NCBI GenBank assembly: GCA_038087875.1
Contig: JAXLNO010005863.1
Coordinates: forward strand, 62,001-126,000
Origin: Malacoraja senta
Taxonomy: Eukaryota
DNA: 64,000 nt
Direction: 5' to 3'
The notes under the pieces were generated by a model that had not been told where the DNA came from, did not search any database, and saw only the letters and a list, made by a program, of their open reading frames with translations. Position 1 is the stretch's first letter; each line of letters begins with the position of its first letter. Below are positions 7,409 to 63,880 of this stretch, piece after piece. The translations under genes and the position numbers were made by a program.

Positions 7409-7724
7409 AGTACATGATGTTGTTGAATTATATATTGATGAAATACACTCATTTATGTACATAGTGTGAAATTGTGATTTGTTAACGGCACAAAACAATG
7501 CAAATGGCGATTTATTTATTATTGTATCTACGTTGGACATTTTGCCCTTTGGTGTAAGCAGGGGTGGGGCTATCATTGTGTTACATACGTTGAATTGTAC
7601 ATCACTTTCATTGGTTAGCTGATATGCTGAACACTGTAACCCTGTATATCTCGCGCACAGAATAATGTGAATTATGTAAATCTTACCATGCATGTCAGAA
7701 ATGAAATGTGTTAACCATGTTTTG

Positions 7725-21390: not shown

Positions 21391-21589
21391 GGGTAGAGAG
21401 CTCGGAGAAAATACAGGGGAAGAGCCATGGGGAAGAAGGGGGTATCACGGGAGCCAGCGAGGGGGACCAGAGGGGTAGTGGCTGGAATTGGCAGTGCTAT
21501 GGGGACTCACAGTGGTCGCTGGTCGTTCTCCTACGCTGGGATCAGTCTCCGCTTTCCATTTGGCGACATCTCTGACTCAACTCCATACA

Positions 21590-21965
21590 CCGCCTCCCCC
21601 ACACCCTCCTCCCCCACAACCCCAACCTCGCCCCTCCCCCCACAACCCCCTCCCCCACACACCCTCCTCCCTCACACTCTCCTCCCCCCACAACCCACCT
21701 CCACCACACAACCCCCCCTCCTCCCCCCCACAACCCAAACCCCGCCCCACCCCCCACAACCCCCCCTCCTCCACACCCTCCTTCCCCCACAACCCCAACC
21801 CCCCCTCCCCCCACAACCCCAACCCCGCCCCTCCCCCACAATCCCCCCTCCCCCCACACTCTCTTCCCCCACAACCCCAACCCCGCCCCTCCCCCCACAA
21901 CCCCCCTCCCCCCCCCACAACCCCAACCCCGCCCCTCCCCCCACAACCCCAACCCAACCTCGCCC
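21590..21965 (+). repeat. C-rich low-complexity repeat (cccccacaaccccaacc-like units)
   Basis: Visible tandem ccccacaacccc units. Confidence 0.9.
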
Positions 21966-36754: not shown

Positions 36755-37698
36755 AGACAATAGATAATAGACAAGAGACAATAGGTGCAGGAGTAGGCCA
36801 TTTGGCCCTTCGAGCCAGCACCGCCATTCAATGTGATCATGGCAGATCATCGCCAATCAGTACCCCGTTCCTGCCTTCTCCCCATATCCCTTGACTCCGC
36901 TATTTTAAGAGCCCTATTTAGTTCTCTCTTGAAAGCATCCAGAGAAACTGCCTCTACCGCCCTCTGAGGCAGAGAATTCCACAGGCTCACCACTCTCTGT
37001 GAGAAATAGTGTTTCCTCGTCTCCGTTCAAATGGCTAACTCCTTATTCTTAAACTGTGGCTTCTGGACTCCCCCCAACATCGGGAACATGTTTCCTGCCT
37101 CTAGCATGTCCAAGCCCTTAACAATGTTATATGTTACAATGAGATGCCCTCTCATCCTTCTAAACTCCAGAGTGTACAAGCCCAGCTGCTCCATTCTCTC
37201 AGCATATGACAGTTCCGCCATCCCGGGAATTAACCTTGTAAACCAACGCTGCACTCCCTCAATAGCAAGAATGTCCTTCCTCAAATTAGGGGACCAAAAC
37301 TGCACACAATACTCCAGGTGTGGTCTCACTAGGGCTCTGTACAACTGCAGAAGGACCTCTTTGCTCCTATATTCGATTCCTCTTGTTATAAAGGCCAACA
37401 TGCCATTCGCTTTCTTCACTGCCTGCTGTACCTGCATGCATACTTTCATAGACTGATGAACAAGGACCCCCAGATCTCGTTGTACTTCCTTTTCCCAACT
37501 TGACGCCATATAGATAGTAATCTGCTTTCCTGTTTTTGCTACCAAAGTGCATAACCTCACATTTATCCGCATTAAACTCCATCTGCCATGCATCTGCCCA
37601 CTCCTCCAACCTGTCCAAGTCACCCTGCATTCTCATAGCATCCTCCTCACAGTTCACACTGCCACCCATCTTTGTGTCATCTGCAAATTTGCTAATAT
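36755..37698 (-). mobile_element. CR1 LINE 3' part
   Basis: ORFs 37367-37792 and 37027-37623 ([34 protein letters not shown]). (tagacaa)n tail on +. Confidence 0.9.
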
Positions 37699-37699
37699 T

Positions 37700-40600
37700 A
37701 AAAACATAGAAACATAGAAAATAGGTACAGGAGGAGGCCATTCGGCCCTTTGAGCCAGCACCGCCATTCATTGTGGTCATGTCCCCTATCAATAACCCGT
37801 GCCTGCCTTCTCCCCATATCCCTTGACTCCACTAGCCCCTAGAGCTCTATCTAACTCTCTCTTAAATCCATCTAGTGACTTGGCCTCCACTGCCCTCTGT
37901 GGCAGGGAATTCCATAAATTCACAACTCTCTGGGTGAAAACTTTTTTCTCACCTCAGTCTTAAATGACCTCCCCTTTATTCTAAGACTGTGGCCCCTGTT
38001 TCTGGACTCGCCCAACATTGGGAATATTTTTCCTGCATCTTGCTTGTCCTGTCCTTTTATAATTTTATATGTTTCTATAAGATTCCCCCTCATCCTTCTA
38101 AACTCTAGTGAATACAAGCCTAGTCTTGTCAATCTTTCCTCATATGACAATCCCGCCATCCCAGGGATCAATCTCTTGATCCTACGCTGCACTGCCTCAA
38201 TCACAAGGATGTCCTTCCACAAATTAGGAGACCAAAACTGTACACAATACTCCAGATGTGGTCTCACCAGAGCCCTATACAACTGCAGAAGAACCTCTCT
38301 ACCCCTATACTGAAATCCTCTTGTTATGAAGGCCACCATTCCATTAGTTTTCTTCACTGCCTGCTGTACCTGTAAGCCAACTTTCAGTGACCGGTGTACA
38401 AGGACGCCCAGGTCTCGCTGCACCTCCCCCTTACCTAACCTAACCTAACCCCATTGAGATAATAATCTGCCCCCTTGTTTTTGCTGCCAAAGTGGATAAC
38501 CTCACATTTATATATATTATACTGCATCTGCCACGCATCTGCCCACTCACTCAACCTGTCCAGGTCAACCTGCAACCTCCTAACATCCTCTTCACAGTTC
38601 ACACTGCCACCCAGCTTTGTGTCATCTGCAAACTTGCTAGTGTTGCTCCTAATTCCCTCTTCCAAATCATTAATATATATGGTAAACAATTGCGGCCCCA
38701 ACACCGAGCCTTGCGGCCAGTGGCGGACTGGCCAGGGTGTCAGCTTGCCCGATGGCAAGTGGGCCCCCCCATATCAAATAAAAATGCAATGTAGAACCAA
38801 ACACAGATAACTGTTTTAGTAATGAAAAGGAATAAGATGTATCTGGCAGCTAGGATTACTCTGAAAGTTTAATTTTAAAAATATCCACGGTATCAACAGG
38901 GATGAACTACTTTTGAGCTAAAATTAGTCACAAAAATTAACATTCATTCAATCTCACAGGACTTATCTTATAATAATTAGTTACAATATTCTCAGATTTT
39001 ACCGCTCCAGTGTGATTTTTAATTCTTTGAAAAGGTTCTCCCAATACTTAAATGACACCAAATAATAATATACTCCAAAAAATTTTGGTTGGCAAGTGAG
39101 AAAATGTTGTATCAAAGATTTGTCCGTATTTTTGTCACACACACTTGAAAAGCCTCAGCCTGCCCCCCCCCCCCCCCCCCCCCCCCGCTCTTATTGAAGA
39201 GATTTTTAATTTTTTGAGTTTTTGTATATGTATAAAAGATCATTGTTGCATATAACATCTTGTTGCATCATTCACCAGGCGGCCAGACGTGGCGTGGCTC
39301 CTTTACCATTCTTTTTATATAGTTTTTCAAGTTTCGTGAAAAAAAATTATCGGTAAACAATATCCAAATTCAGCTACATGTGAGTTCAAATTTAGATATT
39401 AGAAAAACATAATTGTTACACCAGGGTAGGCTCCAGTTATCCATAGTAATTATCTGGTTATCAGTGACTGCATTGAAAATATTATATGAAAAGTTAATGA
39501 AGCCTGTTCTTCAGCATATGTGCTTAAACATAAGTTATTGTTAAAGCTATGTGAGAGGTATTATCAATACTCAGGATTTTTTCATATATATATTCTTGTG
39601 AATCATTGTTCTCAGTGATGAACATTAAGTATCGTAATAGTAATAGCCTTACAGATGAAACTAGTAGTGCTTGAATATCTCTCAAGGTTAACAAATATAA
39701 ACCGGATATAAAATATGAGTCATCAGCGATGCAGCAGCAGGTCTCATTGATGCTAAATGTATAAAATGTCCACAATTATTATTGGGTATGTGCTTAAAGG
39801 TATTATCTGTGAGCGACTACTTTCAGTTGTGCCAAGTAATGATGGTACAGGACAGGGACTTTTTGATCTATTGATTGAAACATTACAGCATCTTAAAATT
39901 GACCCCCAAAAATGTTTATCTGATAGCACAGATGGCACTGCAAGCTACCATGGCCAGTATAATGGTTTACAAGGTAAAATTGCTGATGTGGCTGATCAAC
40001 ATGTTCATATACAATACAATACAATACGGTTTTATTCGTCACATTGCACATAAAGTGCAAGTGAAATGGTGCAATGCCCATGTCTTGAATTTGGTGATAG
40101 CTGAAACAACAAAATGTTGTGAGCCTGCAGTTTCTTTTTTCAATTTGCTCCAGAATAGAGCAACTTTTGTGAAAGCATCATACAAGAGAATGGCCGTATG
40201 GATAGAAGTTGTTGGAAAACATCTAGGATAAGAAAAAATGAAACGATTAAAGCTAATTGGTGAGACCAGATGGTCAGGAAAATCCAATGCAGCAACAACT
40301 ATATTTGGAAGTTTTGATGATGCCGCTGCCAGTACTTTCGTAAATCTATTGACATGATTATCAATGATACAAGATTCAGAAAAGTTTGATGCAAAAACAA
40401 AACATGAAGCAAATGTTTTACTTCAAAGTCTTCTAAAGTTTGAAACCATATTGACAGCATTTATTTACTTGTATATATTTGAAACTACAACCCCATTATC
40501 AAGTTATCTACGGACAAGTGGTTTAGATGTGTTTACTGCATGGAGTTTGGTAGATTCAGCTACAACAAAGTTGAAGGAACAGACAAGAACATTTAATAAC

Positions 40601-42535
40601 GTTCACAGCAAGGCTTTGGAATTTGTAAAGAAATGTAATGACAGGATTTCACAGATGAATATGGATGAAAATCAAACATTGGAAATTATTGCGTTGGAAA
40701 CAGCATTGCCAGTTAAGAGGCAGAGGAAGAAGAAAAGAATGGCAGATGAGCTTATTGATGATGAAAGAAATTCCTCAGATTCTCTAGCTGATTTTTGAGT
40801 AAATGTGTTTAACCCAATAATGGATCGCATTGTCCAGTCACTAGAATCACGCTTTGTACAACACAAACAGTTGTATAAAGATGTGTCCTGCTTGGACCCA
40901 GCAAAGTTTAAAACTATTGCAGAGAAGGGCCTTGAAGATGAAGCATTGGAAGGCATTATTAAGCTGTTTCCACAAATCAGCAAAGATCAAGTAATATTGG
41001 AATTGTTTTCTTTTGCTTCAAACTTTGATGTATTAAAGTTGCTTAATGATGGTGAGAATATGGATTCCAGTTGCAACAATTGTAAAATGTGCAGCACTTG
41101 CCCATCGAGTGTACTAAACATTCTGGCATCCAACAGACTTCATGACTTGATAAAGGCATATGATAACCTTTATCAACTTTATAAAGTCATCTGCACACTA
41201 TCAGTTACTCAAGTCCAATGTGAGAGGACATTTTCAAAGCTAAAGATCATAAAGACAAGGTTAAGAAATTCGCTGTCTGAGGGGAATTTGGAATCATACA
41301 TGTTGCTAACCATTGAAAAGGAATTGTTAGATGAATTGGATGCAGAAGCAATTATTAGCAGATTCGCACAATCATCTAGCGAACACAAACGATTGCTCTT
41401 AATATAGTGGACTGCATGCAATGCTCTATTGTGCTTTTCAACTATCTGTTAATGTGTAAATTGTGCAGTAAATTATTTAAAAATATCAACCAATTATTTA
41501 AAATTTAAAAAAAATTAAATTATAACATTCTGTATTTACATTCGGTATCTACTGCCAGTAATATGTACAGTACATGTACACTGTAATTACTAAGAACCAT
41601 TTTTTTCACAAACATTTTAAATTGTACCCTTTTTTCCATATGTATTTTTTGAAAAATTTATTTATTCGTCGTCTCCTGGCCACCAATATTTTTAGACCCA
41701 GTCCGCCACTGCTTGCAGCACTCCACTCGCCACTTCCTGCCATTCTGAAAAGGACCCGTTCACTCCTACTCTTTGCTTCCGGTCTGCCAACCAATTTTCT
41801 ATCCATGTCAACACCTTACCCCCAATACCATGTGCTCTAATTTTAGTCACCAGTGTCCCGTGCGGGACCTTATCAAAGGCTTTCTGAAAGTCCAGGTACA
41901 CTACATCCACTGGCACCCCTTCATCCATTTTACTTGTCACATCCTCAAAAAATTCCAGAAGATTAGTCAAGCATGATTTCCCTTTCATAAATCCATGTTG
42001 ACGGACTAATCCTTTTACTGCTATCCAAATGCCCCATTATTACCTCTTTAATAATTGACTCCAGCATCTTTCCCACCACCGAAGTCAGGCTAACTGGTCT
42101 GTAATTCCCCGTTTTCTCTCTCGCTCCTTTCTTGAAAAGTGGGATAACATTAGCTATCCTCCAATCCACAGGAACTGATCCTGAATCTATTGAACATTGG
42201 AAAATGATCACCAATGCATCCACTATTTATAGAGCCACCCCCCTGAGGACCCTGGGATGCAGACCATCAGGTCCAGGGGATTTATGATCCTTCAGTCCCA
42301 TTAGCCTACCCAATACTATTTCTCGCCTAATGAAAATGTATTTCAGTTCCTCTACCCCCTTAGATCCTCTGTCCTCCAGTACACCTGGGAGATTGTTTGT
42401 GTCTTCCTTAGTGAAGACAGATCCGAAGTACCTATTCAACTCTTCTGCCATTTCCTTGTTGCCCATAATAATTTCACCCGTGTCTGCCTTCAAGGGACCC
42501 ACGTTTGACTTTGCTACCGTTTTTCCCTTAACATC
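37700..42535 (-). mobile_element. CR1 LINE RT, split by a hAT insertion (37700-38717 and 41712-42535)
   Basis: RT ORFs 42227-42502, 41963-42223, 41692-41988 (SCLTNLLEFFE..YLDFQKAFDKVPH), resuming at 38435-38758 (PQGSVLGPQLFTIYINDL..FADDTKL). Confidence 0.9.
38718..41711 (+). mobile_element. hAT DNA transposon (ZMYM1-like transposase, decayed) with 14-bp TIRs and 8-bp TSD
   Basis: TIRs cagtggcggactgg (38718) and ccagtccgccactg (41698-41711). TSD cttgcggc / cttgcagc. Transposase fragments 39757-41407 include WCNAHVLNLV, ETRWS and the dimerisation motif VTQVQCERTFSKLKIIKTRLRNSL. Confidence 0.93.
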
Positions 42536-49393: not shown

Positions 49394-52300
49394 GTAAGCA
49401 ATGCTCCTTCTACTTGTGAACTTTGAGGAAACAACAAAACTGATTCTATTTACTGTTGCACAGTCCCTGTGTTTGCCCTGGGTACATTGTCTTGGATGTA
49501 TTAATTGAATGATTGAATTGAATGTATTAATAATTTTGGGTAACGGTCATTCCTGAGTTGTAAAAGCACCTGTGGGAAGTTATATACACTATGGTTACCT
49601 TGGCAATCCAATGAACAGAGGAACTGAATACAGGTAAATAATGAACATAGAACATAGGACAATACAGCACAGGAGCAGTTCCTTCAGTCCTTCAGTCTGA
49701 AGAAGGGTCTCGACCTGAAACGTCACCCATTCCTTTTATCCAGAGATGCTGCCTGACCTGCTGAGTTACTCCAGCATTTTGTCTACCTTCGCCCACAATG
49801 TCTGTGCCGAACAAAATAAACTAATCTCCTCTACCTGTATGTGATCTGTATCCGGCCATTCCCTGCCTATCTATGTACCTATCTAAAAGCCTCTGAAATG
49901 TAACTGTTATATCTGCCACCACCATCACCACCACTGGCAGCGCAGTACAGGTGTCCACCACCCTCCACATAAAACAACTTGCTCCGCTCATCTCCTTTGA
50001 ACATTGCTTCTCCAACCTTAAAGTGATGTTCTCTGGTCTTCAACATTTCCACCCTGGGAAAAAGGTTCTGGCTGTCCACTCTGTCTGTGCCTCTCACCAT
50101 GTTATGCACTTTCATCAGGTCTCCCTTCAACCTCCAGTATACAAGAGAAAACAATCCATGTTTGTCCAATCTGTTCTTGCACTAATACCTCAGACAGAAT
50201 TCAGGTAAACCGGTGATGTGCACTTTCAATAAAGAAGTGACTTCTGCATTAGTAGGTGTTCCACCTCTCCAAGATTTCCTCAGCTGGTGTTAGACACCCA
50301 CATGATGGTAAAATTCAGCCTGCATCAAATGACAAATCAATGTTGTGTTAATGTTGTTGCCATCTTGTTGTTTGTTGCATGCTTCCTGTACTGCAGACCC
50401 TATCCATTACATCACCACCACTTCCATATAACCATATAATCATATAACCATTACAGCACGGAAACAGGCCATCTCGGCCCTTCAAGTCCGTGCCGAACAC
50501 TTTTTTTTTCCTTCCCCCTTCTTTCTTCTTACTTCCCCCTAGTCCCATCTACCTGCACCCAGACCATATCCTTCCATTCCTTTCCCGTCCATATACCCAT
50601 CCAATCTATTTTTAAAGGATAAAATCGAACCTGCCTCCACCACTTCCACTGGAAGCTCATTCCACACAGCTACCACTCTCTGAGTAAAGAAGTTCCCCCT
50701 AATGTTCCCCCTAAACTTCTGTCCCTTAATTCTCAAGTCATGTCCCCTTGTTTGAATCTTCCCTACTCTCAATGGGAAAAGCTTATCCACGTCAACTCTG
50801 TCTAACCCGCTCATAATTTTAAAGACCTCTATCAAGTCCCCTCTTAACCTTCTGCGCTCCAAAGAATAAAGCCCTAACTTGTTCAACCTTTCTCTGTAAC
50901 TTAGTTGCTGAAACCCAGGCAACATTCTAGTAAATCTCCTCTGTACTCTCTCTATTTTGTTGACATCCTTCCTATAATTAGGCGACCAAAATAGTACACC
51001 ATACTCCAGAATTGGCCTCACCAATGCCTTGTACAATTTTAACATTACATCCCAACTTCTATATTCAATGCTCTGATTTATAAAGGCCAGCACACCAAAA
51101 GCTTTCTTTACCACACTATCTACATGAGATTCCACCTTCAGGGAACTATGCACAGTTATTCCTAGATCCCTCTGTTCAACTGCATTCCTCAATTCGCTAC
51201 CATTTACCATGTACGTCCTATTTTGATTTGTCCTGCCGAGATGTAGCACCTCACATTTATCAGCATTAAACTCCATCTGCCATCTTTCAGCCCACTCTTC
51301 CAAATGGCCTAAATCTCTCTGTAGACTTTGAAAATCTACTTCATTATCCACAACACCACCTATCTTAGTATCATCTGCATACTTACTAATCCAATTTTCC
51401 ACACCATCATCCAGATCATTGATGTACATGACAAACAACAGTGGACCCAACACAGACCCCTGAGGCACCCCACTGGTCACCGGCCTCCAACCTGACAAAC
51501 AGCCATCCACCATTACTCTCTGGCATCTCCCATTCAGCCACTGTTGAATCCATCTTGCTACTCCACCATTAATACCGAACAATTGAATCTTCTTAACCAA
51601 CCTTCCATGAGGAACCTTGTCAAAGGCCTTACTGAAGTCCATATAGACAACATCCACTGCTTTACCCTCATCAATTTCGCTAGTAACCTCTTCGAAAAAT
51701 TCAAGAAGATTAGTCAAACATGACCTTCCAGGCACAAATCCATGTTGACTGTTCCTAATCAGACCCTGCTTATCCAGATGCTTATATATATTATCTCTAA
51801 GTATCCTTTCCATTAATTTGCCCACCACTGACGTCAAACTAACAGGTCTATAATTGCTTTGTTTACTCTCACAACCCTTTTTAAACAACGGAACAACATG
51901 CGCAGTACGCCAATCCTCCGGCACTATTCCTGTTTCTAATGACATTTGAAATATTTTTGTCATAGCCCCTGCTATTTCTACACTAACTTCCCTCACTGTC
52001 CTAGAAAATATCCTGTCAGGACCTGGAGACTTATCCATTTTCATATTTTTCAAAAGTGTCCGCACCTCCTCTTATTTGAATCTCATAGTTTCCATTGCTA
52101 CTCTGCTTGTTTCCCTTACCTCACATAATTCCATATCCTTCTCCTTGGTGAATACCGAAGAAAAAAAATTGTTCAATATCTCCCCCATCTCTTTTGGCTC
52201 TGCAGATAGCTGTCCACTCTGACTCTCTAATGGACCAATTTTATTCCTTGTTATCCTTTTTCTATTAATATAGCTGTAGAAACCCTTTGGATTTACTTTC

Positions 52301-55300
52301 ACCTTACTTGCAAAAGCAACCTCATATCTTCTTTTAGCTTTTCTAATTTATTTCTTAATATTCTTTTTACATTCTTTATACTCCTCAAGCACCTCATTTA
52401 CTCCATGCTGGCAATAATTATTGTAGATCTCTCTCTTTTTCCGAACCAAGTGTCCAATTTCCCTTGAAAACCATGGCTCTTTCCAATTTTTACTATTTCC
52501 TTTCAACCGAACAGGGACATAAAGATTCTGTACTCTTAAAATGTCACCTTTAAATGTCCTCCATTTCTCTACTACATCCTTCCCATAAAACAACATGTCC
52601 CAATTCACTCCTTTTAAATCCTTTCGCATCTCCTCAAAGTTAGACTTTCTCCAATCAAAAATTTTAACCCTAGGTCCAGTTCTGATCCTCTCCATAATTA
52701 TATTGAAACTAATGGTATTGTGATCACTGGACCCGAAGTGCTCCCCAACGCCCACCTCCGCCACCTGCCCTGTCTCATTTCCTAACAGGAGGTCCAGCAC
52801 TGCCCCTTCTTTAGTAGGTACCTCTATGTATTGCTGCAAAAAACTATCCTGCACACATTTTACAAATTCCAAACCATCCAGCCCTTTTACAGTATGTGTT
52901 TCCCAGTCTAAGTGTGGAAAATTGAAATCTCCCACAATCACTACCTTGTGCTTACTACTAATATCTGCTATCTCCTTACATATTTGCTCTTCCAATTCTT
53001 GCTCCCCATTAGGCAGTCTATAATACACCCCTATATGTGTTGCTACACCTTTCCCATTTCTCAGTTCCACCCAAATAGCCTCCCTAGACGAGCCCTCTAC
53101 TCTATCCTGCCAAAGCACTGCTGTAATATCTTCCTTGACAAGCAATGCAACACCCCCACCTCTTGACCCTCCAATTCTATCACACCAGAAGCAACGAAAT
53201 CCTGGAATATTTAGTTTCCAATCACAGCCCTCCTGCAACCATGTGTCACTGATCGCCACAACAACATACTTCCAGGTGTCAATCCAGGCTCTATCCACGA
53301 CTTCCCCAGAAGACGATAATGAGATTTAAGAAGCTTGAGGATAGGCACGTGGATATGTAGGGACTTGAGGGATATGAATCATGTACAAGCAGTTTAGTTT
53401 AACTTGACATCATGTTCGGCACAGACATTGTGGCTGAGCTCTAACCCATTACACCCTTAATGAACAAAAATATATCAATCTAAATCTGGAAATTTTCAAG
53501 TGGGCAACATATTCAACAGATTACAGAATCGAGAACCAGAAGACATAGGTTTAAATTGAGGGGGGGGGGGGAAGATTTAATGGGAATCTGATGAGCAATT
53601 TCTTCCCACACAATGCTTCCTTTCTAACTATTCTGACAATCGTGAAGGCTTGGAGATTACAAACCTACTCATCCTGAAAGTTTAATCCCATTGTTATCAG
53701 ATGAAAGTAAATATAAAATGGTGATTCCCCTGTTGAAATAATAACATATAAAACAAAAATCCTTGGTTGTGGAGTGTTTTGGGAAGTCACGTGGATTTTA
53801 TCATTACTGTATTCCACTAGCCTTCTTATGTTTCTCCTGGTAACACTGAAACAGACACTTCTAACTCTCCCTTTGGGGCCCCTTCTCACCTCACTTTGAC
53901 ACTGAACTTTGACACTGTCTGGTGTGCTGCATGGAAACTTTATCACAGAACAAATACTGCTTATTCATGTAGAAACAAGAAAATGCAGATGCTGGTTAAT
54001 ACACATAAAATGCTGGAGTAATTCAGCAGGTCAGGCAGTATGTCTGGAGAACATGGATAGGTGATGTTTCAGTTTAGACATCAGTTTAGATGTGTAAGAA
54101 GGAACTGCAGATGCTGATTTAAACCGAAGATAGACACAAAAAGCTGGAGTAACTCAGCGGGACATGCAGCATCTCTGGAGAGACGAAATGGGTGATGTTT
54201 CGCGTCTAGACCCTTCTTCAGACTGGTGATGCAGATGCTGGTTTACACCGAAGATAGACACAAAAAGCTGGAGTAAATCAGGAAGTCAGGCAGCATCGCT
54301 GGAGAAAAGGAATAGATGGCGTTTCAGGTCAAGGCACTTCTTCAGACAGAGTCGGGGGTATATCTTTTATTAATTTGTTCTATGTACCTTTTCATATCGC
54401 TTGGTTCCCTGTCTCCTGATTCTCAGTCTGAAGAAGGGTCTCGACCCGAAACGTCACCTTTTCCTTTTCTCCGGAGATGCTGCCTGACCCACTAAGTTAC
54501 TCCAGTATGTGTCGAGTTTCAGTTTAGACCCTGTTTATTATAGTCTGCTCCGACCCCACCCCCACCCCCCACCCCACCCAAGCCTTGATAGTCGGGACTC
54601 ATCAGTAAGGTCTTCTTTACACTTACTGTTACAGAATCCCAATGTCCTCATAAGTCAGAAGTGCCCCATTCCATGCAGAGATTTCCCACCAGATGGGCAT
54701 TTCAGGGTTGCAGCTCATAGAGATGGTGCCTATGAGGACCTGGACTCAATCCCGATCTCTACTACAACCTGTGTGGCACTTTTATTCTTTCCCTGAAACC
54801 ATGTGTGCTTCCTCTGGTTATTCCAGTTTCTCCCAATATTCCAAAGATGAGAGGCTGAGAGGTAAATTGGCCAGTGTGAATTGATCGTACATACTGTGAC
54901 CTCCATAATGTTTCGGACAAAGACCCATCATATATTTATTTGCCTCTGTACTCCATAATTTGAGATTTGTAATAGAAAAAAATCACATGTGGTTAAAGTG
55001 CACATTGTCAGATTAAAAAAAAGGCAATTTTTTAAACATTTTGGTTTCACCATGTAGAAATTACAGCAGTCAATTTACATAGTCACAAAATACATAGTCT
55101 GCCCCATTTTAGGGCACCATAATGTTTGGGACACAGCAATGTCATGTAAATGAAAGTAGCCATGTTTAGTATTTTGTTGCATATCCTATGCATGCAATGA
55201 CTGCTTGAAGTCTGTGATTCATGGACATCGCCAGTTGCTGGGTGACTTCTCTGGCGATGCTCTGCCAGGCCTGTATTGCAGCCTGTGCTTGTTTTGGGGG

Positions 55301-58300
55301 CTAGTCCCCATTCAGTTTTCTCTTTGGCATATCAAAGGCATGCTCAGTTGCGTTCAGATCGGGTGATTGTCTTGGCCACTCAAGAATTAACAATTTTTTA
55401 GCTTTGAAAAACTCCTTTGTTGCTTTAGGATCATTGTCTTGCTGTAGTATGAACCGCTGGGCAATGTGTTTTGAGGCCAATGTGTTTGAACTTGAGCATA
55501 TAGGATGTGTCTATACACTTCAGAATTCATTATGCTGCTACCATCAGTAGCTGAATGGTCAACAAAGCTAAGTTAGCCAGTACCTTCAGCAGCCATACAT
55601 GCCCAGCCCACAACACCCCCACCACCGTGTTTCACAGATGAGGTGGTATGCTTTGGATCTAGGGCAGTTCCTTCTCTCCTCCATACTTTGCTCTTGGCAT
55701 CACTCCGATATAAGTTAATCTTTGTATCATCTGTCCAGAAGACCTTTTTCCAGAACTGTGGTTGCTCTTTTAAGTACTTCTTGGCAAACTGTAACCCGGC
55801 CATCCTGTTTTTGCGGCTAAACAGTGGTTTGCATCTTGCAGTGCAGTCTCTGTATTTCTGTTCATGAAGTCTTCTGCGGACAGTGGTCATTGGCAAATCC
55901 ACACCTGACTCCTGATGAGTGTTTCTGACCTGTCAGTCCCTTTGCGATTAGTAAAGGATTGGGGTTTTGTCTTTATTATAGAGAGAAGTCTTCTGTCATC
56001 AGCTGTGGAGGTGTTCCTTGGCCAGCCAGTCCCTTTGCGATTAGTAAGCTCACAGTGCTCTCTTTCTTCTTAATGATGTTCCAAACAGTTTGATTTTGGT
56101 AAGCCTAAGGTTTGGCTGATGTCTCGAACAGTTTTATTCTTGTTTCTCAGTCTCATAATGGTCTCTTTTACTTTCATTGGCACAACTCTGGTCCTCCTGT
56201 TGATGAACAGCAATAAAAGTTTCCAAAGGTGATGGAAAGACTGGAGGAAAGACTAGATGCTGAGTTCTCTTATACCTGCATTAAGGAGGCATTTAAATAC
56301 CCCTGAGCAATTACATACATCTGCGAAGCCATGTCCCAAACATTATGGTGCCCTGAAATGGGGGGACTATGTATAAACACAGGTGTAATTTCTACATGGT
56401 GAAACCAAAATGGGCAAAAAATGAATACATAAGCTTAAAATGAGGGGGGAAAGATTTAATAAGAACCAGAGGCATAGCTTTGGTGGGAGTACTGAATGAA
56501 CTGCCGGAGAAGGGAGTTCAGGCAGGTACTATCGCAACATTTAAGAAACATTTAATCTGGTACATGGATAGATAGGTTTAGAAGGATATGGGCCTCCTCA
56601 GACAGCCGTGGAGCCCACGTCAATGGATATTTCTCAGGTGGATATTGACAGATTCTTGATCAGTATGGGTGTCAAGGGTTATGGGGCGAAAGCAGGGAAT
56701 GTGGTTGAGAGGGCGAGATAGAGCAGCCATGATTGAATTAGGCCATTCAGCCGTAGGCCCTGATTCCCTGCTGTATGACTCTTTGACTTTACCTCTCTAT
56801 GATTTTATAAAATCTCCTTGACGTTGTCCATTTTCTTAATATAATAAAATATTCTTTGAATTTTGGAATATTGTAACTAGTAGGCTGTATCGACATGATA
56901 GATAATAATAGATCTTTGAAGATGGGAAGCAATCCAATAGGATCATTCAATACCTCGACCACAATTGGTGGAATAGGTATCAGAGCCCATCTAGCCAACT
57001 CTTGTAGAAGGCTCAGTGGTGCAGCATTAGAGATGCTGCCTTATCGCCCTTACAGCACCAATGCCCAGGTTGGATCCTGACTACGGGTCCTGTCTGTATG
57101 GAGTTTGTACATTCTCCACCTGACCGGGTGGGTTTTTCCTGAGATCTTCAGATTCTTCCCACATTCCATGACGTACAGGTTTGTAGTTTAATTGGCTTGG
57201 TGTAGAATGTAAATTGTCCCTTGTGTGTGTAGGATAGTGTTAGCGTGTGGGGGTTGCTGGTCAGTGTGGACTCAGTGGCCCGAAGGGCCTGTTTCCATGC
57301 TGTATCTCTAAGCTAAAAACTAAACTAAAGGCTCCTGACACAAATTGTCACCTGATCATTGATGCTGCCTGCCCCACTGAGTTCATCCAGCACTTGCATC
57401 TGCAGGTCCTTGTGACTCCCTTATTCAAAGTTATTGTATTGTTATCAGTTTAATAACTCTTAGTTATTTTCAGTGAATGATACAATCATATTTATTATTG
57501 TTTATGCATTGCAGATTTACACCATCTTGCATCTTACTACCTGTTGAACCATGGATTGAGTGAGCTGCCTGAGTACAGTATGGTAGCAATGCTGGATGAC
57601 CTCCAGATAGCATATTTTGAAAGCACACTAGAGCTGGCTATTCCCAGACAGCGATGGATGGCCCAGTCTTTCCCACAGGATCAATGGGATTCAATGGCCA
57701 TCACAGTTGCAGGTTTTCATGGGATTGTCAGAGGAAATGCTGAGATAGTCTACCAACAGCAACATGGTATCTCGAGTAAGTGTCATGACCGGACCTGGGG
57801 TAGACACCCAGTGATGGAACAAATGGATTTTGTTTTAGTTTTGTTGCTGTCACATGATTCTCTGATACACTTTTTTTGCATGTTAGTCAATCACATCAAA
57901 GAAAACTATTCATAAATACAATCAAACCAAACTCGTACAATAGGTAGAGCAAAGAGTGCAGAATGTAGTTCTCAGCATTGTAAGGCACCAGTGCCAGAGA
58001 CAAAGTCCAGTGTCTACAATGGGGTTGAGGTGAACCCTAGCATAAGGGAGGACTGTTCATAAACCAGACAACATAGGGGAGGAAACAGTTACTGAGTCTG
58101 GTGGTGCACGCTTTAATGCTTACGTACCTTCTGCAGGAAGAAGAAGGAATGACCAGAGCGGGATGAATCTTTGATTATGTTGTCTGCTTTCCTGAACCAG
58201 TTGAAATACAGGTGGATTCACTGGTGGGGAATCATGTTTGTGTGATCGACTGTGCTACATCTCCACCTCCCTGCAATTTCCAGCGGTCTTGGGCAGAACT

Positions 58301-61300
58301 CTTTCCAAACTAAGTTGTGATACAACCTGTCAGTATGCTTTCTATGGCACATTTGTAGACATTTGTAAGAGTCATTGGAGATGCCGCATTTCCTTAGTCT
58401 CCTGAGGCAGTAGGGGAACCAGAAACTCTCAACCTTTTTCACTTCAGCACCATTGATGTAGCAATGTTACAAAATTTTGAGATTTTAAAAATAAAGTCTG
58501 CAATTTATCCCATCAGATAAAGCATAAAAAGAAGTTTAATTTGACACCTAATTCACTTTCATATCTTCAGTATTAAAGAAGTTATGGCCATCTTGTTCCC
58601 TATTGCTTTTCCATTGACTTAACACAAAAGCTGTGATCGAGGACAGTCAAAAGCCCATAACTTTCTTAAAAATTAAGATAACTGAAAGACATTTTCAGTT
58701 ATTATAGATTGAAGCATTCTGAAACAAATATGAAACAATCTTACTTAGAAGACATGAAAGTATGGATGACTTGAAATTAAAGCATATAATTAGTTAGTTA
58801 CCTAATTGTAGCTAATTACAAAATTCAATTACTAGATCTAAACATCTATCAATTTCTTAAGAATAGATTAACATTTTTAAATAGCCTAAGTGTCCAAATA
58901 ACATTCACACAATAATTCACAATATAACATAACTTTTAAATCTCATTTTCATGAATTTACAGGCCAAATGGAAGGAATTGAATGTTTAATACCTGTAAAT
59001 TAATGGGCATTTAATTCATTTTGCGAGTGAGGATTTCTGGAACGCGATCATTTGGAACGTTCATTTGCGGTGAATTTAACCCCGTATTGGCATGAAAAAT
59101 ACTGCCGTTAGTTCGGGGAATAAAATCACCGTGTCGCATGAAAAAATGTGAATTAAAGGCTTCTTAAGAAGCACTTTTATACATTTAAAGAAACCACTTT
59201 CGTTTACCTGTCCCGTGTGTGAAATCCGTCCCCGTTATCGGCGTTGACGCTTCAGGAGCTGCTTTTAAAATTACTCTAGCGCTGACATTGACGATTTAAT
59301 AAAAATAAAAAATTCACAAAACGCCGGTAGGAACGATTCATCAGCCAGCGCTTGTACTCCAACAAAATATTAACTAGGACAAGGAAGGAGAAACCCGCGT
59401 TTTAACCCCGCCCCCCCTTAAAGGCGCCAAAATCGCGCATACGGCCAGTGGCAGAATTACAGCGCGACTGAAGGTAGGTTTTGTAACATACCTAATTGAT
59501 GCTGTTTCAGACATTTACTCCATTACATTTTGATAGAGACACGGCCCATCGCCTATATTTAATGTGTCCTAACTGCTGAACACCCATTGATAACAGTTGG
59601 CTGGTGATAGTCTCTTTATGGGTTAAGCATTTGATATTTAACACCAGTAAAAAGTGGATGGATTGGATCATCTGTTTTATTGGGCTGGAATGAGGGAGAA
59701 ACCATTAGTTTATTTATAGCCTGATCACCTAGAGATGGGACCTTGATTTAAGCTGGTTGATGGTGACTATGATGTATTCCCTCAACAATAATATTCTGTT
59801 AATCCAGCATTCCCTCAATATTGGCAGCAATCCACAGAGAGTGTAGCAATCCCACACTGTGCAACAGCCTTGATGTACTACCCATCTGCATTGCCTTAAC
59901 CTTGAGACTGACCTGTTCACTGTATAACATTGCCCATCTGACAATGCACTCCTTCCTCTGTTCTTTATGTACGAAAGTGCAGAATCTGAGTTCTACCCTT
60001 CTGACACAGCAAAACTCCTTTAGTGTTACATCCACAACAGTAAAGCTTCCCCCCTCAACACTTGAGGTTAGTCCATGCCCTCAGTATATAGACCATGGGT
60101 CATTGAGTCACACATCATGGAAACCGGCCCTTCTGCTCACTGAATCCACACTGATCATCCATTGTGCTAAGATGGAGTCACAGCAAACTGCAGATGCTGC
60201 CAATCTGAATTAAAAACAAACAGGAGGAACTCAACGAGTCAGGCAGCATGCTGTGGACAAATGGACAGAAAACATATGAGACCAGGACCATTTAGAGTAA
60301 TGGAGTAGGGTGGAGAAAGCTGGAAAGAAAAGTAGTCTGTGTAGGATAGTGTTAATATGCGGGGACCACTGGTCAGTGCGGACTCGGTGGGCCGAAGGAC
60401 CTGTTTCGGCGCTGTATCTCTGAACTAAACCTGCTCCTGTGCTGTACAGCTCTATGTTGTGTTCTGTTATGCCTGTTTGTACCATGCTGAGAACTGATTT
60501 GTAAATTGCCTCTCCCTTCCATCCACTCACCCCAACCCAAATCCTCCACCCCTACCTCAGCCCAAGCTGTTTTCTTTGTGCAGGGTTTCTGCGGCTGTGA
60601 AGTGGACAGTGACAATTCCACTGATGGGTTTGTCAGACTGGGTTATGATGGGGAGGATGCCTGTGCTTTTGACAAGGACAGAATGTTCTGGATTGCACTA
60701 CGTCCAGATTTCCAGATGCTAGCAGATCGGTGGAATGTCAACACCTTCATGAACAAGTATTTTAAAGATCTCCTGGAGAAGGACTGTGTGAAGTGGCTGC
60801 GGATATATCTGGAGTGTGGACAAGAAGCACTACAGAGGAGAGGTACACGACGTAGGCACTCTGACTGATGGGCCAGAGGATATCCTCTGGATAGATCAGG
60901 TGGGAAATATCATGCACGTCAGGCTGTCACTTGAGTAATTATTTAGTTTAGTTTAGAGATACAGCTCGGAAGCCCACCGACACCGCACCGAGCAGCCATG
61001 CCCGCACACTAACACTATCCTACACACACTAGGGACAATTTGCATTTATACCAATCCAATTAACCTACAAATTTGTACGTCTTTCGAGCGTGAGGGGAAA
61101 CCGAAGATCTCGGATAAAACCCACGCAGGTCACAGGGAGAACGTACAAACTGTGTAAAAACAAGCACCCGTTAGTTAGTAACAAACCCAGGTCTCTGGCG
61201 CTGTAAGGCAGTAGCTCGATCGCTTCGCCACCCTGTTCTTGGGCGAGGGTATCAGTAAATTGTCTGGCAACATGCCTCTTAGATGGAGCCAGTGGGTAGG

Positions 61301-62324
61301 AAGTGCAAGTGAAAGATAAATATTGTACCAGTGTCCTTTATCCACAGTCATATAGATATTCAGGAAATGGAGGAATATGTATCTTGGTCTTATGTTTAGC
61401 ACCGACCTTGTGGCCTGAAGGGTCTGTTGCTGTGCTGATCAGAAACCCAATCAGATTCTCTATTTGCCTCTATTACTCCTTGGGATGGTGACATTCAATT
61501 TCCAACAGTTCTCTGGTTGAAGAACTTCTTCCTCCCATTCCCTCTTGGAATATTTAGTGTTATTATTCAGCTGAGATTCATGAACAAATAGAAGCAATCA
61601 TGTCTACAGTATCAATCCCAATGGTGAGTTATACTCCTCCATTGGGCCCTGCATTCCCCTTTCATCTGTGCTGTCAGTTCAAGTCTGGAGCTAAGATAAG
61701 GAGCATGTCAGTTGTATTAAAACTAAATGTTTTGTTGTTTTGTCAGAAATGCAAAATGAAAAGAGAAAAGGCTGTAAACCTTGTGCAAGATAGAACTGCA
61801 GATGCTGGTTTACACTGAAGATAGAAGATGTTGGCGTAACTCAGTGGGTCAGAAGCATCTCTGGGCATTCCTTCTCTCCAGAGATGCTGCCTGACCTGCT
61901 GAGTTATTCCAGCATTTTGGGTCTAGGCTGGAAACTTAGTTCAGCCAGAGAAAAAACTCTGATTGGGAAAGTGGTGAGTTGCAGTGATCTTACAATTGAA
62001 GGCTTTTGTTCATGTCTTCACTGATTCTGACGCTTCTTACACTTGCAGAAACCTCTGAGGTGTTTATTGGGATTAAAAGTGATGGGTCGCAATCACTGAG
62101 ACTCTCCTGCCTTGTCACAGGCTTCTAGCCACGGGCCATCGATGTAACGTGGCTGAGAGATGGTGAGGGGGTCCACAAGTCTGAATCCAGTGATGATCTG
62201 TTGCCCAATTGGGATGGGACTTACCAGCTGAAGAATACAATTCAACTGAGTAGAGAAGATGTGGCAAAATTCTCCTGTTACATCGAACATGCAACTCTGC
62301 TGCAGGGAGTCAATGTTCCACAGG
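49342..62324 (+). CDS. Nonclassical MHC class I-like heavy chain gene; premature stop in alpha3 (truncated product or recent pseudogene)
   Basis: Four phase-1 GT-AG exons of class-I-typical size (52, 261, 282, 276 nt) encoding leader, alpha1, alpha2 and an Ig C1 alpha3. Confidence 0.92.
50425..53296 (-). mobile_element. Young CR1 LINE, most of ORF2 (APE endonuclease plus RT), in MHC-like intron 1
   Basis: ORF 52348-53298 (ISDTWL..DRIGGSRGGGVALLV..GVYYRLP..IVGDFNFP..LDLLL..SSDH), 52072-52302, and an uninterrupted 508-aa RT ORF 50539-52065 (DFSKAFD, VPQGSVLGP, YADD). Confidence 0.95.
54892..56425 (-). mobile_element. Tc1-family DNA transposon (IR/DR-type ends), decayed; right TIR truncated
   Basis: ORF 55573-55902 (TVRRRLHE..RCKPL..FWKKVFWTDDTKINL..KHGGGGV). 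Direct repeats ccataatgttt.ggaca at ~54903 and ~55117. 56332-56412 is the reverse complement of ~55040-55133. Confidence 0.88.
57010..57329 (+). mobile_element. tRNA-derived SINE (HE1/V-SINE-like)
   Basis: A/B-box-like head, conserved core, gggccgaagggcctgtttcc..tgtatctctaa tail. Further copies near 60950-61230(-), 62430-62730(-), 62790-63070(-). Confidence 0.8.
57515..57775 (+). CDS. MHC-I-like alpha1 exon
   Basis: ttgcag acceptor, A|gtaagt donor. (D)LHHLASYYLLNHGLSELPEYSMVAMLDDLQIAYFESTLELAIPRQRWMAQSFPQDQWDSMAITVAGFHGIVRGNAEIVYQQQHGIS, fully open. Confidence 0.92.
58460..59493. mobile_element. Putative non-autonomous DNA transposon (~1 kb, AT-rich), possibly Kolobok-like
   Basis: Ends share atgttacaaaa / ttttgtaacat, and the right end reads ..gtaacatacctaa. 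No ORF. Confidence 0.4.
59780..60010 (-). mobile_element. Possible ancient Deu-domain SINE remnant
   Basis: Reverse strand gagtgcattgtcagatg..gccaatattgagggaatg loosely resembles the Deu/SacSINE core; recalled similarity only. Confidence 0.3.
60561..60842 (+). CDS. MHC-I-like alpha2 exon
   Basis: cctacctcag acceptor, G|gtacac donor. (T)QAVFFVQGFCGCEVDSDNSTDGFVRLGYDGEDACAFDKDRMFWIALRPDFQMLADRWNVNTFMNKYFKDLLEKDCVKWLRIYLECGQEALQRR; canonical C101 and C164 present. Confidence 0.93.
62049..62324 (+). CDS. MHC-I-like alpha3 (Ig C1) exon with in-frame TAG at 62126-62128
   Basis: cttgcag acceptor, G|gtaagt donor. (E)TSEVFIGIKSDGSQSLRLSCLVTGF*PRAIDVTWLRDGE..LLPNWDGTYQLKNTIQL..FSCYIEHATL. Not in the ORF track because of the stop. 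Confidence 0.92.
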
Positions 62325-63069
62325 GTAAGTGGCAAGTCAATGCGGCTGATCACTTGAGACAATAAACCTCCTGGACTGAGATAACAGCCTCAACTCACAC
62401 TCTTAACTAAGCTGTGCATTTAGACTTTAAACTTTAGAGATATGGTGCAGATACAGACCCCTCAGCTCACTGAGTCCTCGCTGAACAGTGATCATCCCGT
62501 ACATTTACACTAACCAACACACTGGGGACAAATTACAATTTTACCTAAGCCAAGTAACCTTCAAGCCCATATTTCTTTGGAGTGTGGGAGGGAACCGGAG
62601 CACCCGGAGAAAACCCACGCAGTCACAGGGAGAACATACAATGTCCTTGCAGACAGCACCTGTAGTCAGGATCGAACCCAGGTCTCTGGTGCAGTAAGGA
62701 AGCAGCTCTACTGCTACGCCACTGTGCCACCCATTATTAATTTGTGGTTATCTAATTGCCCAGAATTATTGATAGTCAATGGAATGTGGTTTTAGTTTAA
62801 GAGATACAGCCCAGAAACCAGCCCTTCAGCCCACCGAGTCTGCGTCAACCAGCGATCCCTGCACACTTACATTATCTTACTTATTAGGGGACAATTTACA
62901 ATTATACCAAGCCAATTAACCTACAAACCTGTCTGTCTTTGGACTGAGGGAGGAAACCGGAGATCCAGGCAAAACCCACGCAAGTCCCGGGGAGAAGGTA
63001 CAAAACTCTGTACAGACGGGACCCGTAGTCAGAATTGAACCGGGTCTCTGGCGCTGTAAGGCAGCAGTT

Positions 63070-63880
63070 CCACCGAGTGGGCAAAGCAGAGCCAAATGGA
63101 ATACAGTGTAGCAAGTGTCTGGTTTTACATTTTGGCAGTCGGAATAAAGACATAGACTATTTTCTAAATGGGGAGAGAATTCAGAAATCTGGGCTACAAA
63201 GTGGGAATACTAGTGCAGGATTCCCAAATAGTTCATTTGCAGATTGAGTCAGTGGTAAGTAAGGCAAATGCAATGCCAGCATTCATTTCGGGGGGACTAG
63301 AATATAAAAACAATGATATAATGCTGAGGATTTATCGGGCACTGGTGAAGACACATTTGGAATATTGTGAGCAGTTTTGGGCTCCATATTAGAAAGGATG
63401 TGCTGGCTTTGGAGAGGGTCCAGAGGAAGTATGTCCTGGGGATGATTGATTTAACGTATGAGGAATGTTTGAAGTCTCTGGGCTTCTACTCATGGGAATT
63501 TAGAAGGATGAGGGGGAAATCTCTGAAACCTACCAGTTAATGAAAGTCCCAGTTGGTGGATGTGGATAGGATGTTTTCAGTAATGGGAGAGTCTAGCACA
63601 GCCTCACAATAAAATACGTACTTTCAAAATGGAGATGAGGAGGAATTTCTTTAGTCACAGGGTGGTGAATCTGTGGAATTCATTGATACAGACAGCTGTG
63701 TGGGTCAAGTCATTGCATATTTTAAAGCAGAGAATGATAGGTTCTTGATTAGTATGAGTGCCAAAAGTTACAGGGAGAAGGCTGGAGAATGGGATTCAGA
63801 GGTAAAAATAGATCTGCCATGACTGAATGGTGGAGTAGACTCAATGGACTGAAAGGCCTACTTCTGCTCCAATGGTAAAA
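63070..63880 (+). mobile_element. Old CR1 LINE 3' fragment
   Basis: KCLVLHFGSRNK..KANAMPAFISGGLEYK..IYRALVKTHLEYCEQFWAPY. Other CR1 scraps near 25000-25220, 25780-26370, 42820-43650, 47180-47640, 49820-50170. Confidence 0.8.

What the first reader, a model, noticed from the sequence alone, without database searches (positions are those of the whole stretch)
57515..60842. Nonclassical MHC class I with a hydrophobic, lipid-type groove (CD1/EPCR-like candidate)
Manual alignment to HLA numbering shows most peptide-terminus anchors are lost: Y7>S, Y59>Q, Y84>Q, Y123>A, T143>L, Y159>L, K146>R. Only W147 and Y171 are kept, and the N86 glycan site is absent (a new NST sequon sits in alpha2). Groove-facing positions are mostly hydrophobic: M63, V67, F70, I73, V74, I80, V81, V95, V114, L116, M152, F156, L159. 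This pattern is known from lipid or small-molecule binders such as CD1 and EPCR. Both exons are fully open. Lipid presentation in this species is inference, and the gene may belong to an already named chondrichthyan nonclassical lineage.
Basis: partly seen in the sequence, partly recalled or inferred. Interest (0 to 1): 0.78.

Follow-up and report, generated by a model that had tools for sequence, protein, structure and literature searches.

The report
Dead skate UGA-sister MHC-I copy
This is a real non-classical MHC class I gene of a skate with a greasy groove that lacks the peptide anchors, from an old shark-and-ray lineage sister to the lipid-binding-type "UGA" gene, but this copy carries a stop codon and looks like a decaying pseudogene.

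Summary
The window has phase-1 class I exons for alpha1, alpha2 and alpha3. All 13 listed hydrophobic groove residues are there.

The gene is not classical, CD1, EPCR or MR1. It belongs to a well-supported, low-copy clade found in sharks and rays and named "MR1-like" in RefSeq. That clade is sister to UGA (PDB 9CH4) and distinct from UFA (8GM8). A 2025 review, citing a personal communication, says UGA and UFA bind lipids. The clade has the greasiest groove lining of the groups compared (66% hydrophobic, 7% charged), so a hydrophobic ligand is a fair inference for the lineage.

This copy looks dead. Alpha3 has an in-frame TAG at the invariant GFYP tyrosine. The window's branch carries 7 changes at sites at least 90% conserved in the lineage, against 0 on the little-skate branch. 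dN/dS against little skate is 0.77.

Earlier notes of this scan report the same lineage on at least five other pieces of this genome, some intact. I could not check those. I found no published name for the lineage.

The parts
57515..57775 (+). Alpha1 exon (phase 1). The donor is tcga|gtaagt at 57775/57776. A weaker in-frame alternative donor lies at 57766/57767.
   Evidence: The ORF is open. The exon start is confirmed by a spliced RNA contig of a related skate (record 1). The donor is the one used in the little skate RefSeq model P0001. Best PDB match is UGA 9ch4, E 1.6e-21.
60561..60842 (+). Alpha2 exon (phase 1 in and out, 282 nt). It holds Cys101 and Cys164, the NST sequon and the lineage motif MNKYFK.LLEKDCVKWL.
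   Evidence: (MHC_I 6e-15). The acceptor ctcag| gives an in-frame join and the FFVQ strand shared by all orthologues.
62049..62324 (+). Alpha3 (C1-set Ig) exon, phase 1, interrupted by a stop codon.
   Evidence: C1-set 2e-8; best match UGA 9ch4. The exon end at 62324 is confirmed by a spliced RNA contig of a related skate that runs on for 38 nt into the next exon (record 6).
62126..62128 (+). In-frame TAG replacing the tyrosine of the invariant GFYP motif.
   Evidence: Sequence read and tblastn. Tyr is invariant in 16 orthologues and is TAC in little skate.
62192..62194 (+). Window-specific in-frame 3-nt insertion (an extra Asp, SSDDLL).
   Evidence: It is absent from all four sequencing runs laid on the window (table 4) and from both little skate copies.
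50424..53294 (-). LINE insertion (endonuclease and reverse-transcriptase ORFs) 4.2 kb upstream of alpha1, absent at the orthologous little skate site.
   Evidence: ORFs are listed. In one search the flanks 50001-50423 and 53295-54535 map to adjacent positions 737-1161 and 1153-2356 of L001.

Best explanation
The locus is a skate copy of a conserved, low-copy elasmobranch non-classical MHC class I (MHC-Ib) lineage. That lineage is the sister group of UGA and is called 'MHC class I-related (MR1)-like' by RefSeq.

In intact relatives the gene encodes a membrane-bound, presumably beta2-microglobulin-associated heavy chain. Its alpha1/alpha2 groove has lost the peptide-terminus anchors and is lined by invariant hydrophobic residues. 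From this I infer that it displays a conserved hydrophobic, lipid-like ligand rather than peptides.

The copy in this window is no longer functional. A TAG replaces the GFYP tyrosine early in alpha3. That would truncate the protein before the Ig domain, transmembrane region and tail, and would expose the mRNA to nonsense-mediated decay. The copy has also accumulated replacements at sites that are otherwise invariant in the lineage.

Shown: gene structure, lineage placement, groove composition, the stop codon and the skewed substitutions. Inferred: the lipid-type ligand of the lineage, the loss of expression or function of this copy, and beta2m pairing.
For: - Exons and domains.
- Ortholog: the nearest protein is little skate XP_055486430.1, 92% identical in alpha1. 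The locus is colinear with it, with 6.6-7.8% intron divergence.
- Lineage: orthologues in 12 or more shark and ray species are 54-72% identical, then identity drops sharply to 36% or less for single-gene models of other class I (three fused or short gene models fall between).
- Tree: window + little skate 100/100, lineage clade 100/100, sister to UGA 95/84. Classical and multicopy shark clades are separate.
- Named relatives: 9CH4 is UGA and 8GM8 is UFA by their PDB titles.
- Synteny: the sawfish orthologue lies in the MHC-Ib cluster between B2M/BRD2 and COL11A2/RXRB.
- Anchors: S Q Q A L R W L Y in the window, F H Q A L R W L Y across the lineage.
- Groove, 49 positions: 66% hydrophobic, 7% charged, mean hydropathy (KD) +1.18, against classical 48%, 15%, +0.08. 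26 of 49 positions are invariant.
- Conservation: ray-shark alpha1alpha2 identity is 74-77%, higher than alpha3.
- Transcription in a relative: spliced RNA contigs in a related skate.
- Decay: TAG at 62126-28. 7 versus 0 changes at sites at least 90% conserved on the window versus little-skate branch. dN/dS 0.77 overall and 1.39 in alpha3. A window-specific 3-nt insertion.
Against: - The stop rests on one base of one assembly. I could not read it in reads of the same individual, because the rows that would show it were not printed.
- The total number of amino-acid changes on the two skate branches (about 14 versus 8) is not significantly different.
- Alpha1 and alpha2 are still fully open.
- The leader exon was not found, and the transmembrane exon lies beyond the window, so the rest of the gene could not be judged.
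- No RNA data of this species were available.
- Lipid binding of the lineage is inferred from composition and from a sister lineage whose lipid binding I know only from a review that cites a personal communication.
Confidence: 0.8

Rival explanations
1. The gene works in this species. The TAG is an assembly or base-calling error, or a rare null allele of the sequenced haplotype, and other haplotypes encode a full-length lipid-type presenting molecule.
For: Alpha1 and alpha2 are open and splice sites are intact. The orthologue is intact in little skate and spliced RNA exists in a related skate. Only one disabling lesion was seen.
Against: Seven replacements at lineage-invariant or near-invariant sites, including F7S, D35E and H59Q, sit on this branch, against none in little skate. 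dN/dS is about 0.8. There is an extra in-frame insertion. These do not depend on the single TAG base.
Confidence: 0.12
2. The stop is used: the gene makes a secreted alpha1-alpha2-only product, without the Ig domain or membrane anchor.
For: The stop falls 25 codons into alpha3, leaving a complete alpha1/alpha2 platform. EPCR and some NKG2D ligands work without alpha3 (general knowledge).
Against: The stop lies upstream of at least one more exon junction (62324), so NMD is expected. It leaves a 25-residue Ig fragment that cannot fold. None of 16 orthologues has this form. Platform residues invariant in the lineage are changing as well.
Confidence: 0.03
3. It is a direct homologue (orthologue) of CD1, EPCR or MR1 kept in cartilaginous fish.
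For: RefSeq names the orthologues MR1-like. MR1 gives the best PDB sequence matches to alpha2 alone and is among the best fold matches. Orthologues carry weak Pfam MHC_I_3 hits. The lineage shares 'DHW' (His at HLA-59 / MR1-58) with MR1.
Against: Over alpha1alpha2 the order is UGA 143 bits, carp classical 110, MR1 97, shark UAA 94. The MR1 Schiff-base Lys43 position is Ala, by alignment to the K43A entry 4lcw. No CD1 is in the top 50 structural matches. Lemur CD1b-like sequences fall far away in the tree. An alpha3 domain is present, unlike EPCR. A profile search found no member outside sharks and rays.
Confidence: 0.03

Closest known systems
Shark non-classical MHC class I UGA (PDB 9CH4, released 2026-03-18)
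   Same: Sister clade in the tree (95/84). It is the best sequence match for alpha1, alpha3 and alpha1alpha2 and the best structural match (Z 24.9, TM 0.88, rmsd 1.6). The two share A123, L159, D163 and the alpha2 motif MN.YFK.LLEKDCV. The genes lie next to each other in sawfish and little skate.
   Different: Only 37-39% identical in alpha1alpha2. UGA keeps Y7, Y59 and K146, where this lineage has F7, H59 and R146 (S7 and Q59 in the window). UGA has F99, this lineage an invariant Cys99. This lineage's groove is more hydrophobic (66% versus 50%). This copy is broken.
Shark non-classical MHC class I UFA (PDB 8GM8, released 2024-11-27)
   Same: An MHC-linked elasmobranch Ib lineage with lost anchors and a hydrophobic groove lining (59%). 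It groups with the UGA + this-lineage clade at 95/86, though long branches are involved.
   Different: Only about 26% identical and 68 bits. It has a different alpha2 architecture, and the gene models end in a short hydrophobic stretch without a cytoplasmic tail. It is a separate 100/100 clade.
[quoted passage not shown]
   Same: The same lineage, and for little skate the same locus. Identity is 92% in alpha1, the introns are colinear, and the exon borders are identical.
   Different: Those have Tyr in GFYP and F7, D35 and H59. The window has a stop, S7, E35 and Q59.
MR1 (mammals)
   Same: Similar overall alpha2 sequence and platform fold. His at the Y59 position. A monomorphic-type, highly conserved alpha1alpha2.
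   Different: No Lys43 (Ala instead). Not closer than fish classical class I over alpha1alpha2. MR1 is absent from cartilaginous fish according to the review table in PMC12562908.
CD1 / EPCR
   Same: Loss of peptide anchors and a hydrophobic, low-charge groove lining.
   Different: No sequence or structural preference for CD1. The modelled tails of the orthologues have no tyrosine sorting motif. EPCR lacks alpha3, which this gene has.

Membership tests
MHC class I heavy chain | An alpha1/alpha2 platform domain followed by a C1-set Ig domain, on separate phase-1 exons, with the Cys101-Cys164 and Ig cysteine pairs. | tested here: met
   Pfam MHC_I 6e-15 and C1-set 2e-8. Exon phases were read. 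The cysteines are present. The AF2 model of the orthologue platform has pLDDT 93.7.
Classical class I (UAA) | Eight or nine invariant residues that hold the peptide termini (Y7, Y59, R/Y84, Y/F123, T143, K146, W147, Y159, Y171). | tested here: not met
   Only W147 and Y171 are kept. The same columns show the full set in classical elasmobranch and teleost sequences. The gene falls outside the classical clade.
UGA lineage (9CH4) | Falls inside the clade that holds the crystallised UGA and its ray and shark orthologues. | tested here: not met
   It is the sister clade, not inside UGA. Each clade has 100/100 support, and identity between them is 37-39%.
UFA lineage (8GM8) | Falls inside the clade of UFA-type sequences. 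| tested here: not met
   UFA is a separate 100/100 clade at about 26% identity.
UGA-sister lineage (RefSeq 'MR1-like' of sharks and rays) | Clade membership plus the lineage-invariant motifs (NST in alpha2, Cys99-Gly-Cys101, MNKYFK.LLEKDCVKWL, L143/R146/L159). | tested here: met
   The clade has 100/100 support and the window pairs with little skate at 100/100. The motifs are present.
CD1 | CD1-type alpha1alpha2 domain (Pfam MHC_I_3), a deep two-pocket hydrophobic groove, and closest structural kinship to CD1. | tested here: not met
   MHC_I_3 scores 21 bits, below its cut-off of 35 and well under MHC_I at 56 bits. No CD1 is in the top 50 PDB matches. Lemur CD1b-like sequences are distant in the tree.
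MR1 | Lys43, which forms a Schiff base with the ligand. | tested here: not met
   The aligned residue is Ala in the window and in the little skate orthologue, and A/T/I/C across the lineage (position fixed by the K43A entry 4lcw).
EPCR (PROCR) | Alpha1alpha2 platform directly followed by the membrane anchor, with no alpha3 domain. | tested here: not met
   An alpha3 exon is present at 62049-62324.
Functional (intact) gene | An uninterrupted reading frame through all the domains seen, with constraint at lineage-invariant sites. | tested here: not met
   TAG at 62126-28. 7 versus 0 changes at conserved sites, and dN/dS 0.77.
Lipid-presenting molecule (function) | Bound lipid shown by mass spectrometry or structure. 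| not testable with these tools
   I have only composition and kinship to UGA, for which lipid binding is reported second-hand (PMC12562908).

The most novel reading that the evidence does not exclude
The UGA-sister lineage to which this dead copy belongs may be a third, still unnamed, hydrophobic-ligand-presenting class I molecule of sharks and rays. It would be older than the shark-ray split and the most conserved of the three. Its groove is built around an invariant free Cys99 and His59. In skates it is turning over by birth and death: this window is dead, a second little skate copy is dead, and intact copies are reported elsewhere in this genome.
Probability: 0.45. Interest if true: 0.6.

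Novelty: new member of a known kind. Interest (0 to 1): 0.35.

Why it matters
The copy in this window is an ordinary decaying gene. The lineage it belongs to matters for a live question: how old non-peptide (CD1-like or MR1-like) antigen presentation is.

Published text names UFA and UGA as CD1-like lipid binders of sharks and rays. This sister lineage has a still greasier and more conserved groove, lies beside UGA in the MHC-Ib cluster, and had no name in the papers I could read.

A dead copy next to intact ones would also show that such conserved presenting genes duplicate and die in skates. That is worth knowing before picking a copy for expression, tetramers or knock-outs. The gene family itself is already annotated in RefSeq and flagged as MHC-Ib in a 2023 genome study, so this is a useful lead rather than a surprise.

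Tried and rejected
1. Suspected frameshift at the alpha1/alpha2 join. The textbook-looking acceptor tgcag| at 60583 is out of frame with a phase-1 donor. I rejected this: that stretch is coding (FFVQ, shared by all orthologues), and the acceptor at 60560/60561 is in frame.

2. Reading the TAG in other individuals. laid four runs, but the table of differences prints only 40 of 394 rows, and not even all differences of one contig. Absence of a row at 62126-28 therefore proves nothing.

3. Leader exon. A scan for ATG + hydrophobic core + phase-1 donor in 53.3-57.5 kb, and in the little skate flank, gave no conserved candidate. RefSeq also calls the little skate model partial.

4. Lineage name. 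No source name other than automatic RefSeq/UniRef ones appeared in three cluster look-ups. The 2020 and 2021 J Immunol papers on UDA and UEA are not held. From my memory of the UDA abstract, UDA keeps eight of nine anchors, so UDA does not fit. The 30-sequence sharks-only multicopy clade fits UEA. Both statements are recollection, not tests.

5. Other class I exons in the window: none.

6. A relative outside sharks and rays: the profile search found none. That search finds candidates by shared words, so this is weak evidence of absence.

7. The Foldseek and VIA scores do not separate groove types, since every class I platform scores Z of about 24. They say nothing for or against lipid binding.
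Full report
**What is there.** On the + strand the window holds three MHC class I exons with the usual phase-1 borders.
- Alpha1 runs 57515-57775, with a weaker in-frame alternative donor at 57766.
- Alpha2 runs 60561-60842.
- Alpha3 runs 62049-62324.

Pfam scores are MHC_I at 6e-15 on alpha2, MHC_I at 0.0016 on alpha1 (below the curated cut-off), and C1-set at 2e-8 on the post-stop part of alpha3. The rest of the window holds no other class I exon and is mostly transposon debris.

An RNA contig from a related skate (about 92-94% identical) begins its match exactly at 57515 and carries 21 nt of an upstream exon. Another ends its match exactly at 62324 and continues 38 nt into a downstream exon (records 1 and 6). 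Those two exon borders are therefore real, and the orthologue appears to be transcribed and spliced in that relative (the run is labelled 'RNA?').

By colinearity with the little skate locus, the transmembrane and tail exon would lie about 0.9 kb past the window's end. I could not find the leader exon.

**A correction to the exon map.** At first sight the alpha2 acceptor is 'ttttctttgtgcag|' at 60583. With a phase-1 alpha1 donor that join is out of frame. In fact that stretch is coding. It encodes FFVQ, the first beta strand of alpha2, which every orthologue has. The acceptor ctcag| at 60560/60561 gives an in-frame join and is the one used in the little skate model. There is no frameshift.

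I aligned the window protein (with X at the stop) with 75 class I sequences. As a ruler I used the classical sequences in that set (sawshark, stingray, electric ray, two teleosts). They show Y7 Y59 R84 F/Y123 T143 K146 W147 Y159 Y171 in the expected columns. Alpha1 has no N-glycan sequon, and alpha2 has one NST.

With that protein as query, one or a few such genes appear in each of 12 or more shark and ray genomes, at 54-72% identity. These include sawfish, manta, two stingrays, sawshark, sevengill, two catsharks, zebra, epaulette and bamboo sharks, smooth-hound, and basking and white sharks. After those, identity drops sharply to 36% or less for single-gene models of all other class I. Three fused or short gene models fall between.

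A profile of the 16 orthologues found no member in chimaeras or bony vertebrates. That search depends on shared words, so the absence is weak evidence.

An IQ-TREE (LG+C20) tree of 76 sequences gives these results:
- window + little skate, 100/100
- the lineage as a clade, 100/100
- the lineage as sister to a second clade, 95/84
- classical sequences, a 30-member sharks-only multicopy clade and a chimaera clade all elsewhere

Foldseek on an AlphaFold model of the little skate platform (pLDDT 93.7) identified the second clade. Its solved member 9CH4 is titled 'shark nonclassical MHC class I, UGA', and it is also the top VIA-align match (Z 24.9).

A model of a third clade (RefSeq 'CD1d-like') matched 8GM8, titled 'shark nonclassical MHC class I, UFA'. 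The window's lineage is therefore neither UGA nor UFA. It is UGA's sister.

In sawfish the orthologue (LOC127585976) lies in the MHC-Ib cluster between B2M/BRD2 and COL11A2/RXRB/HSD17B8. Three more Ib genes follow it there (supplement of PMC10751288). In little skate it shares a 127-kb contig with a UGA gene.

I found no published name for this lineage. From my memory of the UDA abstract, UDA keeps eight of nine anchors, so it does not fit. That is recollection, not a test.

**How the lineage probably works.** I compared 49 positions that line the groove in HLA.

| Group | Hydrophobic | Charged | Mean hydropathy |
|---|---|---|---|
| This lineage | 66% | 7% | +1.18 |
| UGA | 50% | 11% | +0.49 |
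| UFA | 59% | 7% | +1.09 |
| Classical | 48% | 15% | +0.08 |
| Shark multicopy clade | 52% | 16% | +0.19 |
| Lemur CD1b-like (alignment less sure) | 56% | 17% | +0.73 |

Of the 49 positions, 26 are invariant across the lineage. Ray-shark identity is 74-77% in alpha1alpha2 but only 53-67% in alpha3. The ligand platform is thus the best-kept part, as in monomorphic presenters of a fixed ligand.

The lineage-wide anchor set is F7, H59, Q84, A123, L143, R146, W147 (Leu in carpet sharks), L159, Y171. An unpaired Cys99 on the groove floor is invariant.

A 2023 paper calls UFA 'very similar to CD1' in its binding region (PMC10751288). A 2025 review says, as a personal communication, that crystal structures and mass spectrometry suggest UFA and UGA bind lipids like those of CD1d (PMC12562908). 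A hydrophobic, lipid-like ligand is therefore a reasonable inference for the sister lineage. It is not shown.

**It is not an MR1, CD1 or EPCR homologue in any testable sense.**
- Over alpha1alpha2 the PDB scores are UGA 143 bits, carp classical 110, MR1 97, shark UAA 94 and UFA 68.
- The MR1 Schiff-base Lys43 position is Ala (fixed by the K43A entry 4lcw named).
- No CD1 is among the top 50 structural matches.
- The gene has an alpha3 domain, which EPCR lacks.
- The modelled cytoplasmic tails of the orthologues carry no tyrosine sorting motif.

**Why this copy is most likely dead.**
1. The alpha3 exon has TAG at 62126-62128 where all 16 orthologues have the Tyr of GFYP, and little skate has TAC. 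The stop is followed by at least one more exon junction, so nonsense-mediated decay is expected. Any protein made would lack the Ig domain, membrane anchor and tail.
2. I polarised the window versus little skate differences with 14 other orthologues. The window branch carries about 14 replacements, 7 of them at sites at least 90% conserved in the lineage: F1L, F6S (HLA 7), D35E, V42I, H56Q (HLA 59), P183S and Y207stop. The little skate branch carries about 8, none at such sites. A 7:0 split has a two-sided binomial p of about 0.016. The overall 14:8 split is not significant.
3. Against little skate, dS is 0.061, matching intron divergence of 0.066-0.078. dN is 0.047, so the ratio is 0.77 overall and 1.39 in alpha3.
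4. The window has a private in-frame 3-nt insertion in alpha3, absent from four sequencing runs and from both little skate copies.
5. A private 2.9-kb LINE insertion sits 4.2 kb upstream of alpha1.

**Limits.**
- The TAG rests on one assembly. The reads I laid came from relatives or near relatives, and the printed table was truncated, so I could not see that base in them.
- No RNA of this species was available.

**Copies elsewhere.**
- Little skate has a second copy on another contig that is itself dead. It has no alpha1 exon in the aligned stretch and a TGA at the Cys164 codon. The window is closer to the intact little skate locus (p 0.066-0.078) than to that copy (0.093-0.095).
- Earlier notes of this scan report the same 'UGA-sister' lineage on at least five other pieces of this same genome, three called intact and two broken. 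I reached the UGA-sister placement on my own before reading them. I could not inspect those pieces.
- If the notes are right, this window is one dead member of a small, turning-over skate gene family, or a dead haplotype. It would not mean the lineage is lost from the species.

**Verdict.** This is a non-classical class I gene whose lineage has a conserved, anchor-less, very hydrophobic groove and is sister to UGA. This copy is a pseudogene with about 0.8 confidence. It is not CD1 or EPCR kin, and lipid presentation remains an inference for the lineage. It is a new member of a known kind, and interest is modest.

Noticed in passing
window 50424-53294 (- strand): A LINE with long endonuclease (316 aa) and reverse-transcriptase (508 aa) ORFs is inserted here. 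It is absent at the orthologous little skate site, whose flanks are contiguous with about 8 bp of overlap, like a target-site duplication. It lies 4.2 kb upstream of the class I alpha1 exon and could have affected its promoter or leader.
   Followed up: partly
L002:11743-11994 and 13957-14217 (little skate contig JAMYXN010000412.1): Little skate has a second copy of the same lineage, modelled by RefSeq as XP protein P0110, that is itself broken. It has a TGA at the Cys164 codon, no alpha1 exon in the colinear stretch, and damaged alpha3 motifs. Skates therefore duplicate this gene and lose copies.
   Followed up: partly
alignment A1 / window 60590-60598: All 16 orthologues have an unpaired Cys at the groove-floor position (HLA 99), two residues before the disulfide Cys101, and an invariant His at HLA 59. 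UGA has Phe and Tyr at those positions. A free thiol in a presenting groove is unusual and might touch the ligand.
   Followed up: no
L001:12960-13040 versus window 60843-60868: The little skate RefSeq model reads 12 codons past the canonical alpha2 donor (G|GTACAC) and then joins at a non-GT site, so this looks like a model artefact. In the window the same read-through hits a TGA at 60866-60868.
   Followed up: partly
window 20950-21960: A GC-rich block (62% GC) consists of degenerate tandem repeats of period about 16-83. It is G-rich on the + strand up to about 21390 and C-rich from about 21590, so the two arrays face each other in opposite orientation. The long proline- and glycine-rich ORFs there are by-products of the repeat.
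   Followed up: partly
window 5519-7693 (-), 35564-36397 (+), 37027-38423 (-), 39875-41407 (+): Further transposon remains are present: a 724-aa reverse-transcriptase ORF in an AT-rich stretch, several CR1/L2-type RT tails, and hAT-like transposase fragments. No host gene other than the class I gene was seen in the window.
   Followed up: no
window 57300-63200, runs X8 and X9: Two runs of unknown library type from one organism cover introns and exons of this locus evenly, at word depths of about 150 and 1500-2400. That is far more than whole-genome data of that size would give. In 59743-60047 there are two variants at depths of about 133 and 40. This suggests enrichment or several collapsed copies of the locus.
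   Followed up: no
proteins P0016, P0030, P0090 (UFA clade): UFA gene models of a shark and two stingrays end in a short hydrophobic stretch with no cytoplasmic tail.
   Followed up: no
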